This document shows positions 15,356-16,974 of a stretch of DNA of 39,577 nt, piece by piece (within the stretch, counting starts at the first letter, position 1; the number at the start of each line of letters is the position of its first letter). The position numbers and the translations under genes were made by a program. The notes below the pieces were generated by a model. That model was not told the DNA's origin and ran no database searches. It saw only the letters and a program-made list of their open reading frames with translations. The stretch lies in sequence record NC_010152.1. One strand, written 5' to 3'.

Positions 15356-15658
15356 TTACACCGTTATCATTATCATTTCCTTTAAAAATCTGTTGAGGGT
15401 AGTCCCTCTCTTTTTCAGCTCTAGTTTGACTAGTATCTCATTCCTTTTCTCCAGTTTGCAGTTTATCCTATAGTATTTTTTCCCGTTGACGATAATGTAG
15501 CTTCCTTCCAAATCCTGTCTCTTATAGTCTCTAGTTCTGTCCTCAATCCCAAAGTACTCCTTCAATATTTTCCTAATTACTGCCGGTACACTAGTACCTT
15601 CTTCTTTTGCTTTCTTCTTCAGAAATTCGTAAACTTCTTCTTCTACTGTTACCATCAT
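15356..15658 (-). CDS. avtR: AvtR transcription regulator (two RHH motifs, 100 aa)
   Basis: MVTVEEEVYEFLKKKAKEEGTSVPAVIRKIL plus a second RHH; size and divergent RHH neighbour match AFV6 AvtR as I recall it. Confidence 0.85.
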   Translation of the reverse strand: MMVTVEEEVYEFLKKKAKEEGTSVPAVIRKILKEYFGIEDRTRDYKRQDLEGSYIIVNGKKYYRINCKLEKRNEILVKLELKKRGTTLNRFLKEMIMITV

Positions 15659-15743: not shown

Positions 15744-16034
15744 ATGGAGCTTGTTAAGATTTCCGTAAGGTTTAATCAAAAGTTGAAACTTATTTTTGAT
15801 AACATAAAACCACGAGATAAGACTAACGACGGGTTTTTGCGTGAGCTTTTTAACGAATGTAGTGACGTCGTCGAGAAGGTGAGTTACGATCTAGGTGAGA
15901 ATTTGAGACCATATTGCCTGAGGTTGTCTCCAGAACTAGTAAAGAGTCTTGACGGTCTAGGCGAGAAGCTAGGTCTGTCTAGGTCAGAAGTCATACGCCG
16001 ATTGATTTATGCGAGGGCGAAGAAATTGTGCTAA
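15744..16034 (+). CDS. Double RHH regulator (96 aa)
   Basis: YCLRLSPELVKSLDGLGEKLGLSRSEVIRRLI. Confidence 0.85.
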   Translation: MELVKISVRFNQKLKLIFDNIKPRDKTNDGFLRELFNECSDVVEKVSYDLGENLRPYCLRLSPELVKSLDGLGEKLGLSRSEVIRRLIYARAKKLC

Positions 16035-16421
16035 TTGCACAGGTGGTGAAGCCTGGGTTCTACATTGACTATAAGGTGAGGAGCCTTGAAGACATCCCCT
16101 GGTACTTCGTCCACTTCGTCAAGACAATCGGAGAAGAGAAGTACGGAACAAACAATATGTGTTACATTATCCTTCGATTACGACGAGTGGAGCCACCCAA
16201 TCTTCGTGGAGGGGACTATTTGCGAACCATTACAGGAGGGGAGAGAGAAGGAGCAGGTGAGGGAAATGGTAGAAGAGCTGGAGGATCAGATCCTGGATTT
16301 GTTTGGAGTGCAAATTCTTCCCTTGTTAACAGACGAGGGGATTTGGTATGGTGGTGCTCCCGGGAGAAGGATTATATGGTACCATCGTTATCCTTCGGAC
16401 GGGAGGGAGTATACGTGGTAG
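16028..16421 (+). pseudogene. Apparently frameshifted ~130-aa gene (frame 0 to ~16148, then +1 frame to TAG 16421), or read as part of ORF267
   Basis: The +1 frame (QTICVTLSFDY...EMVEELEDQILDLFG...) is protein-like, while frame 0 over the same DNA is G/R-rich. The TAG overlaps the next GTG. Confidence 0.5.
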
Positions 16422-16831
16422 ATGCTAGACAAGTTGTAAAACTAGACGTGGATGTGGATGTGGCGTGGTATGATCCCAACTGGCTTCTGGAGAAGAAATT
16501 GTCGCTCTTGCACGCCCTAGGCTACAGAGAGGAGAAAGCCTGGTGGGAGTTGTCACCCTCGGGGAGACATGTTCACTTGATAATTGTCCTTCCGAGTCCT
16601 CTCTCCACGAAGGAGCTCTTTGATCTTCAATTCCTGTTGGGCGACGATCCAAAGCGAGTTGAATTTAATTACCTGCGTTACAGCGCCATAGGGGAAGATG
16701 CTGTTCATTTTAATGTTCTCTATGCGTATAAGAAGTCCTTAACACGTGTTGATAAACTGAGGGCGATTTTCCGGCATTGGGCAAGATCTCTGCAATATTC
16801 GAAGAAGCGTAATGATGGACAAATGACGTAA
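16415..16831 (+). CDS. AEP (primase/polymerase)-like catalytic domain protein (138 aa; C-terminal part of ORF 16028-16831)
   Basis: GGAGG SD 8 nt before GTG 16415; KLDVDVD, SPSGRHVHLII and LGDD.KR motifs. Confidence 0.6.
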   Translation: MVDARQVVKLDVDVDVAWYDPNWLLEKKLSLLHALGYREEKAWWELSPSGRHVHLIIVLPSPLSTKELFDLQFLLGDDPKRVEFNYLRYSAIGEDAVHFNVLYAYKKSLTRVDKLRAIFRHWARSLQYSKKRNDGQMT

Positions 16832-16917
16832 TACAACACGCCCGGTATTTCCTCAACGATGGCGTAGCGTACCTGAACATTCCCTTCTCCTGCGAATCCT
16901 TCTTCCACAATTCTCAT
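16720..16917 (-). CDS. Hypothetical protein (65 aa, MRIVEEG...)
   Basis: TTTAAAT box ~28 nt upstream; overlaps the AEP-like ORF antisense by 112 nt. Confidence 0.45.
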   Translation of the reverse strand: MRIVEEGFAGEGNVQVRYAIVEEIPGVLYYVICPSLRFFEYCRDLAQCRKIALSLSTRVKDFLYA

Positions 16918-16974
16918 TTCATCTTTTTCTCTCGTGTAGATAAATTTAAATATTTTGTATCCTACCTTATACAC

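What the first reader, a model, noticed from the sequence alone, without database searches (positions are those of the whole stretch)
16028..16831. ORF267 looks like a frameshift fusion hiding two genes (or a programmed +1 recoding site)
Seen in sequence: frame 0 is open for 267 codons, but codons ~50-125 are G/R-rich and unnatural. The +1 frame over the same DNA reads like a globular protein and stops at TAG 16419-16421, overlapping a GTG (16415) preceded by GGAGG. Removing one A in GGAACAAACA (~16148) gives a 130-aa gene coupled to a 138-aa AEP-like gene. Possible explanations are a sequencing error, a real indel creating a novel fusion, or regulated frameshifting that yields both products. 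An internal ATG (~16267, GGTGAGG upstream) could also give a 51-aa product.
Basis: partly seen in the sequence, partly recalled or inferred. Interest (0 to 1): 0.62.

Follow-up and report, generated by a model that had tools for sequence, protein, structure and literature searches.

The report
Hidden gene nested inside AFV6 ORF267
One stretch of this archaeal virus genome is read in two frames: a well-folded 111-residue protein gene with its own start signal sits inside the annotated 267-codon gene. This layout is kept in every known relative, so it is neither a sequencing error nor ribosome slippage.

Summary
The window is Acidianus filamentous virus 6 (AFV6). ORF267a (16028-16831) is open in frame 0, but codons ~42-130 evolve as a protein in the +1 frame, which ends at TAG 16419-16421 overlapping GTG 16415.

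This is not an error. Seven isolate genomes, about 50 distinct metagenome loci and five or six very distant lipothrixvirus-like loci (including the SSFV3 isolate) share the layout. Hot-spring metagenome contigs show no unpaired indel (only paired ones at 16319-16328).

It is most likely not a frameshift either.
- An invariant AAGGTG plus TTG (16073-16078, 16086) precedes the +1 frame at this virus's usual ribosome-binding spacing.
- From that TTG to the hand-over point, +1 stops are never created (0 of 116 opportunities, against 42-60% elsewhere).
- The junction has no slippery, rare or stop codon and no conserved RNA structure.
- Distant homologues are stand-alone proteins; none is called with the N domain in frame.

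Frame 0 is also kept open across the nested gene (0 of 488 opportunities, against 31-37%). So an N-domain, disordered-linker, C-domain protein is probably made as well. The C part also keeps its own start codon at the +1 stop.

Best reading: a deeply conserved gene-within-a-gene. The nested gene is unannotated in AFV3/6/7/8/9, SIFV and SIFV2. Function is unknown, and the AEP-like label for the C part is not confirmed.

The parts
16028..16831 (+). Frame-0 ORF267a (267 codons): N domain, low-complexity linker, then C domain. It is kept open over its whole length in all relatives.
   Evidence: Frame-0 stop avoidance across the overlap: 0 of 488 at-risk contexts, against 31-37% in controls. AlphaFold2 gives the linker pLDDT 21-25.
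16028..16153 (+). N domain (42 aa) of the frame-0 protein. It is under purifying selection in frame 0, and the +1 frame carries stops in its first half.
   Evidence: Wobble phase. Alignment A5, 33 sequences, 79% mean column identity. Recognisable in distant loci L110-L115.
16028..16034 (+). GTGCTAA: the start of ORF267a overlaps the TAA stop of ORF96b. This is the same 7-nt start/stop layout seen at the nested gene's stop.
   Evidence: Start codon present in 51 of 52 loci (ATG 39, GTG 11, TTG 1; the exception, L055, is an offset artefact).
16073..16078 (+). AAGGTG, a Shine-Dalgarno-like site for the nested gene. GGTG begins 11 nt before the TTG.
   Evidence: Invariant in 12 of 12, 32 of 33 and 50 of 52 loci, although both third positions are synonymous in frame 0. 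14 of 66 annotated AFV6 genes carry GGTG within 20 nt upstream (13 at -10 to -12, one at -15), against a 3.6% background.
16086..16088 (+). TTG start codon of the nested +1 gene.
   Evidence: Invariant in 33 of 33 and 51 of 52 loci. It is kept even where the frame-0 codon changes from Leu CTT to Ile ATT. The same AAGGTG + TTG is found in distant loci L110 and L113 and in SSFV3, where ORF13 is annotated from it.
16086..16421 (+). Nested +1 gene, 111 aa plus TAG. Not annotated in the AFV6 record.
   Evidence: metagenome gene callers-aa products P0013, P0014, P0015. AlphaFold2: residues 21-111 confident, pTM 0.68.
16086..16148 (+). Leader of the nested gene (21 codons). It overlaps the conserved N-domain coding, is poorly conserved and is predicted disordered, yet is kept free of +1 stops.
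   Evidence: 0 of 116 at-risk contexts create a +1 stop, against 60% upstream of the TTG and 42% in the C part (Fisher 1e-29). pLDDT below 50.
16149..16418 (+). Conserved core of the nested protein (90 aa), a beta-beta-alpha-beta-beta-beta fold. Frame 0 reads the same DNA as the G/R-rich linker.
   Evidence: Alignment A6, 84% mean column identity. Wobble phase. Distant homologues P0016-P0020.
16148..16154 (+). Hand-over point: ACA A ACA (generally ACR N ACN). The last frame-0-constrained codon is Thr41 and the first strongly +1-constrained codon is Thr.
   Evidence: The middle base is A, G, T or C among relatives. No conserved RNA structure downstream.
16415..16421 (+). GTGGTAG: the nested gene's stop (TAG) overlaps a frame-0 start codon (GTG) for a stand-alone C product.
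   Evidence: With a TAA or TAG stop the frame-0 codon is ATG or GTG in 31 of 31 loci. CTG or TTG occurs only with a TGA stop, which itself creates a GTG start (GTGA).
16415..16831 (+). C domain (138 aa). It has invariant D-x-D, S-x-S-G-x-H-x-H and G-D-D motifs and a low-confidence ferredoxin/RRM-like model.
   Evidence: Alignments A2, A7, A8. AlphaFold2 pLDDT 53-79. Best fold matches are ACT/RRM-like at Z 6-7.4, with no primase among the top 50. Metagenome callers call it as 131-151-aa genes.

Best explanation
ORF267a is a conserved dual-coding locus, a gene within a gene, not a broken or frameshifted gene.

Proposed mechanism, on one mRNA that also carries ORF96b:
1. Ribosomes start at 16028, coupled to the ORF96b stop, and read frame 0 to 16831. 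The product has a conserved 42-aa N domain and a conserved 138-aa C domain. These are tethered by an ~88-aa G/R-rich, disordered linker whose sequence is simply what frame 0 reads across the nested gene.
2. Other ribosomes start at the internal AAGGTG-N7-TTG (16073-16088) in the +1 frame. They make a 111-aa protein with a 20-residue disordered leader and a 90-residue folded core.
3. Where the +1 frame stops (TAG 16419), a frame-0 GTG/ATG overlaps it. This probably allows termination-reinitiation and yields some C domain on its own.

Shown here: both frames are kept open by selection; the amino-acid constraint switches frames; the start signal is conserved; the layout is ancient.

Inferred: that each product is actually made, in what ratio, and what the proteins do. 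A role in genome replication, with the C part as a small primase-like domain, is only a lead.
For: Identity and annotation: AFV6, with a single ORF annotated in AFV3/6/7/8/9, SIFV and SIFV2.

Frame switch: wobble phase goes frame 0 to +1 to frame 0. The +1 peptide is nearly invariant where the frame-0 peptide drifts.

Frame 0 kept open:
- 0 stops against 4-7 expected per genome.
- 0 of 488 stop-creating synonymous choices, against 31-37% in N and C controls.
- The same in five distant loci: 0 of 88 against 49 of 141.

Independent +1 start:
- Of 41 N-region codon columns, only 5 have an invariant third base. Three of them are exactly those forming AAGGTG and TTG. The background in the C part is 4 of 122 (two are Trp, one is the start codon).
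- The motif is present in 50-51 of 52 loci.
- GGTG at -11 matches the virus's own genes.
- +1 stops are frequent upstream of the TTG (60% of opportunities) and absent downstream of it (0 of 116).
- L110, L113 and SSFV3 keep the AAGGTG + TTG. L112 and L114 use an ATGTATG double start.
- Distant homologues are stand-alone 85-128-aa proteins. None carries the N domain in frame.

Folding: the +1 core is confident and its leader disordered. The frame-0 linker has pLDDT 21-25.

C start: start-codon and stop-type covariation.

Not an assembly artefact: the contig pieces from 4 metagenome runs show no unpaired indel.
Against: - There is no expression evidence. No RNA run holds the locus, and no proteomics or ribosome profiling was found.
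- The conserved part of frame 0 ends exactly where the conserved part of +1 begins (Thr41 | Thr). That is what a frameshift junction would look like.
- The many loci are related, so the Fisher P values overstate independence.
- AlphaFold2 gave the N domain low confidence (pLDDT 37-46), and nothing shows what it does.
- The complex prediction of the nested protein with N and C gave no verdict.
- In L113 and L114 no start codon overlaps the nested gene's stop, so a separate C product is not universal.
Confidence: 0.8

Rival explanations
1. Programmed +1 ribosomal frameshift (or a short hop) at ~16148. Ribosomes that began at 16028 shift into +1 and make a 130-aa N-plus-core protein. Non-shifted ribosomes make the 267-aa protein.
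For: - Constraint hands over from frame 0 to +1 with no gap or overlap.
- The junction is always Thr-codon, one base, Thr-codon (ACR N ACN) in 33 sequences.
- The N domain is conserved and frame 0 is open, as in systems that make two proteins sharing an N terminus.
Against: - No shift-prone codon. ACR cannot re-pair in +1, and the following frame-0 codon is a common AAC/GAC/TAC/CAC. There is no stop and no rare codon.
- The bases before and between the Thr codons vary freely.
- No conserved RNA structure downstream: -0.65 kcal/mol with no covariation.
- No homopolymer run for transcriptional slippage.
- The +1 frame is kept stop-free for 21 codons upstream of the junction, starting exactly at a conserved SD + TTG. 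A shift would not require this.
- In L115 about 20 extra codons separate the N domain from the core. In L110 ATG codons sit right at the core.
- No distant homologue is called with N in frame.
Confidence: 0.08
2. Only two real genes exist, the +1 gene and the C gene. The 267-codon frame-0 ORF is an annotation artefact whose middle is not meaningfully translated.
For: - Metagenome gene callers split the locus into 111-aa and 131-138-aa genes.
- The frame-0 middle is low-complexity, unconstrained at the amino-acid level and predicted disordered.
- A start codon for C is conserved at the +1 stop.
- Protein-atlas neighbours of C are stand-alone 121-132-aa proteins.
Against: - This leaves the 42-aa N domain unexplained. 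It is under clear purifying selection in frame 0 and has a conserved start coupled to ORF96b.
- It also leaves the total avoidance of frame-0 stops across 88 codons unexplained. This holds in every lineage, including very distant ones.
- In L113 and L114 no start overlaps the +1 stop, so there C is most simply reached through frame 0.
Confidence: 0.09
3. Sequencing error, or a recent indel private to AFV6, that fused two genes.
For: A single-base change near 16148 would join the N domain to the +1 core.
Against: - The identical frame layout is present in AFV3/7/8/9, SIFV, SIFV2 and SSFV3, in about 50 distinct metagenome loci and in five distant loci.
- Metagenome contigs covering 16052-16225 show no gaps there.
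Confidence: 0.005

Closest known systems
Phage lambda Rz/Rz1, and phiX174 gene E within D and B within A (embedded genes in a second frame; from general knowledge, not tested here)
   Same: A complete gene with its own ribosome-binding site and start lies inside another gene on the same strand in the +1 frame. Both frames are maintained by selection.
   Different: - Here the embedded gene is the well-folded, strongly conserved one. The outer frame over the overlap is a disordered G/R-rich tether joining two conserved domains.
- The virus is an archaeal filamentous virus and the start is TTG.
- A third product (C alone) is likely.
- Functions are unknown and expression has not been shown.
Programmed +1 frameshift sites (bacterial prfB, yeast Ty1/Ty3, antizyme) and the archaeal -1 site in Saccharolobus solfataricus fucA1 (general knowledge)
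   Same: Two reading frames whose conserved parts abut at one point, with the upstream frame also continuing open.
   Different: - No shift-prone P-site codon, no stop or rare A-site codon, no nearby stimulator and no conserved structure.
- The +1 frame has its own upstream start signal and is protected from stops upstream of the junction.
SSFV3 (OP999015.1) ORF13/ORF14 annotation
   Same: The homologue of the nested gene is annotated (ORF13, starting at the same AAGGTG + TTG). It overlaps the 'conserved lipothrixviral protein' ORF14 by 241 nt.
   Different: ORF14 is annotated from an internal start. The frame is in fact open upstream to an N-like domain. The describing paper does not mention the overlap.
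Small AEP-like primase domains (Pfam PF24387) as a lead for the C part
   Same: Similar size (about 125-135 aa). D-x-D, S-G-x-H and D-D motifs occur in the same order. The protein-atlas feature score to a PF24387 cluster is 0.91.
   Different: No profile match. No PDB sequence match. No primase among the top 50 fold matches of a low-confidence model.

Membership tests
Embedded same-strand overlapping gene pair | Both frames stay open over the overlap in relatives more than synonymous-codon chance allows | tested here: met
   Frame 0: 0 of 488 stop-creating choices against 31-37%, and P about 1e-3 per genome. +1 leader: 0 of 116 against 42-60%. Distant loci: 0 of 88 against 35%.
Embedded same-strand overlapping gene pair | The embedded frame is under amino-acid-level purifying selection | tested here: met
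   The wobble phase switches to +1 over 16149-16418. The core alignment has 84% mean column identity. Homologues are found down to ~40% identity.
Embedded same-strand overlapping gene pair | The embedded gene has its own translation start signal | tested here: met
   AAGGTG-N7-TTG is invariant at synonymous sites. Its spacing equals that of the virus's own SD-led genes.
Embedded same-strand overlapping gene pair | Both products detected (protein or ribosome footprints) | not testable with these tools
   No RNA run holds the locus. No proteomic report was found.
Programmed +1 ribosomal frameshift | Conserved shift-prone P-site codon that can re-pair in +1, followed by a slow (stop or rare) A-site codon | tested here: not met
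   The junction is GGN ACR N ACN. The neighbouring bases vary and the A-site codon is a common AAC/GAC/TAC/CAC.
Programmed +1 ribosomal frameshift | Stimulatory element (nearby SD-like site or downstream RNA structure) | tested here: not met
   The SD-like site lies 70 nt upstream, paired with a TTG. The consensus fold of 12 sequences downstream is -0.65 kcal/mol with no compensatory pairs.
Programmed +1 ribosomal frameshift | Homologues elsewhere carry the two parts in one frame | tested here: not met
   A profile search of 1.84 billion proteins found core homologues of 85-128 aa without the N domain. The only N-containing hit (P0021) is an indel variant that joins the frames in mid-overlap.
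AEP / primase-polymerase (Pfam PF24387 AEP-like) for the C part | Profile match above the family cut-off | tested here: not met
   No Pfam hit for AFV6 or any of 33 homologues at E up to 10. PF24387 searched against the whole AFV6 genome gave no match.
AEP / primase-polymerase (Pfam PF24387 AEP-like) for the C part | Catalytic motifs D-x-D, s-G-x-H and h-D in order | tested here: inconclusive
   D11/D13, S47-S49…H52/H54 and D77/D78 are invariant even in distant loci. Their equivalence to the AEP motifs rests on resemblance only.
AEP / primase-polymerase (Pfam PF24387 AEP-like) for the C part | AEP fold | tested here: inconclusive
   The model has pLDDT 53-79. Best matches are ACT/RRM-like ferredoxin folds at Z 6-7.4, with no primase in the top 50. 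The atlas feature score of 0.91 to a PF24387 cluster is only a lead.

The most novel reading that the evidence does not exclude
A single 804-nt stretch yields three cooperating products in all SIFV/AFV-type (beta-type and related) lipothrixviruses:
- a folded 111-aa protein read in +1;
- a 'bridge' protein in which two conserved domains (N and C) are tethered by a disordered RG-rich linker that exists only as the alternative reading of the nested gene;
- free C domain made by reinitiation.

Together they would form the virus's missing replication-initiation (primase-like) machinery, with the overlap fixing their relative amounts.
Probability: 0.2. Interest if true: 0.8.

Novelty: new variant of a known kind. 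Interest (0 to 1): 0.62.

Why it matters
- It adds a conserved protein-coding gene that is missing from the reference annotations of AFV3, AFV6, AFV7, AFV8, AFV9, SIFV and SIFV2.
- It corrects how ORF267 and its homologues should be read.
- It gives a statistically clean case of same-strand dual coding in an archaeal virus; I found none described in the papers searched.
- The arrangement is unusual. The embedded frame is the structured one, and the outer frame uses the overlap only as a tether between two conserved domains.
- Lipothrixviruses have no recognised replication proteins. A deeply conserved three-product locus with primase-like motifs next to the AvtR-type regulators is therefore a sensible first target for experiments.

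Tried and rejected
- Pfam, PHROGs and NCBIfam scans of N, core, C and the whole ORF: only PHROG 12608 (unknown function) for the frame-0 ORF.
- PDB sequence-profile searches with four alignments: nothing. The only 'hit' was the Strep-tag motif WSHPQFEK.
- Fold searches of the nested protein against PDB (Foldseek), PDB (VIA wide), BFVD and the ESM Atlas. Only weak T-fold-like matches (Z about 5, TM about 0.5) came back, so no assignment was made.
- Fold search of the frame-0 model: generic ferredoxin-like matches for C only.
- Complex prediction of the nested core with N and C: no verdict (scores 0.74, 0.01, 0.10). This is not evidence either way.
- Protein-atlas look-up of the core: nearest clusters score below 0.9 and were not used.
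- RNA evidence: no RNA run holds the stretch and the four DNA runs are contigs, so expression could not be examined.
- Literature: no paper on ORF267, SIFV0030 or frameshifting in lipothrixviruses. The SSFV3 paper does not discuss the overlap.
- I did not fold an N-plus-core chimera read with a four-letter codon.
- Contig L105 looked like a different architecture but appears to be a chimeric or recombinant contig, so it was set aside.

Full report
**Identity and annotation.** The window is the complete record of Acidianus filamentous virus 6 (AM087121.2, Betalipothrixvirus pozzuoliense). The stretch 16028-16831 is annotated there as one gene, ORF267a, 'conserved hypothetical protein'. The homologous stretch is also annotated as a single ORF in AFV7, AFV3 and AFV8 (267 aa), SIFV2 and SIFV (265 aa) and AFV9 (252 aa).

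- Frame 0 is open for 267 codons from GTG 16028.
- The +1 frame is open from 16080 and ends at TAG 16419-16421. That TAG overlaps GTG 16415 as GTGGTAG.
- Aligning the seven frame-0 proteins shows strong conservation of residues 1-42 and 130-267, with drift in between.
- Translating the same DNA in +1 gives a peptide that is nearly invariant in all seven viruses: …QT(I/V/L)CVTLSF.YDEWSHP.FVEGTIC…LED.ILDLFG.QVL.LL.DEG.WYGG…WYHRYP.DG.EYTW*. It ends at the same stop in each.
- The position of highest variability in the nucleotide alignment is the frame-0 third base up to ~16140, the +1 third base from ~16150 to ~16415, and the frame-0 third base again afterwards.

So the middle of ORF267 evolves as a protein in +1.

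**It is not an error or a private indel.**
- All seven isolates share the layout.
- Searching metagenome collections with the +1 protein brought in 80 more loci. 52 complete, distinct loci (8 virus-collection records, the rest metagenome) were tabulated.
- In those 52, frame 0 is open for 240-286 codons in every one. In all but the anomalous contig L105 the +1 frame ends at the same place as in AFV6.
- Four hot-spring metagenome runs hold near-identical and related sequence. Their contig pieces report indels only at 16319-16328, as compensating pairs that correspond to divergent sequence also seen in AFV3/AFV7. There are none near 16148 or 16415.

**Frame 0 is kept open on purpose.**
- Resampling synonymous codons of the +1 core predicts 4-7 frame-0 stops per genome. 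None is seen (P about 1e-3 each).
- Conditioning on the protein sequence, I counted the places where one of the synonymous +1 codons would create a frame-0 stop. There are 488 across 33 non-redundant sequences, and the stop-creating codon is never used.
- The same measure on the N and C parts, for their equivalent alternative frame, gives 31% and 37%.
- This control carries the same codon and dinucleotide habits. The absence is therefore selection, which means ribosomes do read frame 0 across the overlap.

**The +1 frame has its own start.**
- In frame-0 codons 2-42, only five third positions are invariant among 12 diverse sequences.
- Three of them are the G of AAG (Lys16), the G of GTG (Val17) and the T of CTT/ATT (Leu/Ile20). 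Together these spell AAGGTG-N7-TTG.
- For comparison, 4 of 122 codon columns in the C part have an invariant third base. Two of those are Trp and one is the start codon.
- The motif is intact in 32 of 33 and 50-51 of 52 loci.
- In AFV6 itself, 14 of 66 annotated genes carry GGTG within 20 nt upstream (13 of them 10-12 nt before the start, one at 15), against a 3.6% background. The nested gene has it at -11, and 4 of 66 genes start with TTG.
- GGTG as the Shine-Dalgarno core of genes inside Sulfolobales operons is established knowledge.
- The decisive test concerns +1 stops. Between the TTG and the hand-over point, frame-0 synonymous choices that would create a +1 stop are never used (0 of 116). 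Upstream of the TTG they are used in 60% of opportunities, and in the C part in 42%.
- The boundary between '+1 stops allowed' and '+1 stops forbidden' is the TTG, not the junction. A ribosome that shifted at 16148 would not care about +1 stops upstream of it.

**The junction does not look like a shift site.**
- Across 33 sequences it reads TAY GGN ACR N ACN. The Gly wobble is free and the middle base can be any nucleotide.
- The frame-0 codon after Thr41 is a common AAC/GAC/TAC/CAC. There is no stop, no rare codon and no run of identical bases.
- The consensus RNA fold of the 120 nt around and after it is -0.65 kcal/mol with no compensatory pairs.
- What remains in favour of a shift is the exact abutment of the two conserved parts and the Thr-N-Thr pattern. 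I keep the frameshift at about 8%.

**Depth of conservation.**
- A profile of the +1 core was searched against 1.84 billion proteins. It found stand-alone homologues of 85-128 aa (plus a 76-aa fragment, P0024) at ~40% identity, none with the N domain in frame.
- Their contigs are lipothrixvirus-like; the SIFV-type capsid gene is called on two of the five, L110 and L113.
- In all five, the frame of the downstream C homologue runs open upstream across the whole nested gene, up to an N-like domain (…Y.D..V..LE.IP……G.EKYGT…). The nested gene sits in +1 relative to it.
- Frame-0 stop avoidance holds there too: 0 of 88 against 49 of 141.
- L110 and L113 even keep AAGGTG plus TTG, 24 and 21 codons before the core. 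L112 and L114 instead have ATGTATG, so both frames start 4 nt apart.
- One of these lineages has a cultured isolate, SSFV3 (OP999015.1). Its annotators called the nested gene (ORF13, from that TTG) and an overlapping ORF14 from an internal start. The paper does not comment on this.

**A separate C product.**
- The nested gene's stop always overlaps a frame-0 start codon: RTG-GTA-R when the stop is TAG or TAA (31 of 31).
- When the stop is TGA, the sequence GTGA itself supplies a GTG. Only then is the upstream codon allowed to be CTG or TTG (5 of 20).
- The same 7-nt start/stop layout joins ORF96b to ORF267 (GTGCTAA).
- This points to termination-reinitiation. It is not universal, because L113 and L114 lack it.

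**What the proteins look like.**
- *Nested protein:* AlphaFold2 on a 10-row alignment folds residues 21-111 with confidence (pTM 0.68; strands 23-32 and 39-48, helix 54-73, strands 81-88, 93-99 and 107-110). The 20-residue leader is left disordered.
- *Frame-0 protein:* mean pLDDT is 42. The linker (40-131) is at 21-25, N at 37-46 and C at 53-79.
- *Fold searches:* only weak T-fold-like matches for the core, and generic ferredoxin/ACT/RRM-like matches for C.
- *Family scans and PDB sequence searches:* nothing.
- *C part:* D-x-D, S-x-S-G-x-H-x-H and G-D-D are invariant out to the distant loci. Its nearest named cluster in the protein atlas is a PF24387 'AEP-like' family at 0.91. However, the PF24387 profile finds nothing in AFV6. 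'Primase-like' is therefore a lead, not a result.
- A complex prediction of the core with N and C gave no verdict.

**Verdict.** It is a deeply conserved gene-within-a-gene with independent initiation, not a frameshift fusion, recoding site or error. Shown here are the two-frame selection, the start signal and the age of the layout. Inferred are the actual production of the three products and any function.

Noticed in passing
window 16720-16917, minus strand: A conserved 65-aa antisense ORF (MRIVEEG…KVKDFLYA) overlaps the last 36 codons of ORF267a and fills most of the 'intergenic' gap. It is the homologue of annotated SIFV0031 and is not annotated in AFV6. It has a conserved ATG and is open in all relatives. 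Antisense stops are never created (0 of 70 opportunities, against 84 of 246 in the C body). It has no family match.
   Followed up: partly
window 16945-16962: TTTAAATATTTTGTATCC is invariant in all 12 aligned lineages, about 13-30 nt before the ORF119 start. It is probably that gene's TATA-type promoter.
   Followed up: no
L007 (AFV9) about 1559-1690: AFV9's ORF252 is shorter because of a ~24-codon insertion carrying an in-frame TAG. The usual tail (…LQYRKKCNDGDIT*) is still present in frame after the insertion.
   Followed up: partly
P0021 (metagenome protein, 130 aa) and L105: P0021 joins the frame-0 N domain and half the linker to the second half of the +1 core, so that contig carries a one-base indel in mid-overlap. 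L105 switches to unrelated sequence after the core's first half and looks chimeric.
   Followed up: partly
L116 (SSFV3, OP999015.1) 844-1553: ORF14 ('conserved lipothrixviral protein') is annotated from an internal start. The frame is open 72 codons further upstream and includes an N-like domain.
   Followed up: partly
window 15744-16034 and 15356-15658: ORF267a is translationally coupled to ORF96b (putative regulator). The pair lies divergent from ORF100, an AvtR-type regulator. This three-gene arrangement is the same in the six isolate relatives annotated here (AFV3/7/8/9, SIFV, SIFV2).
   Followed up: no
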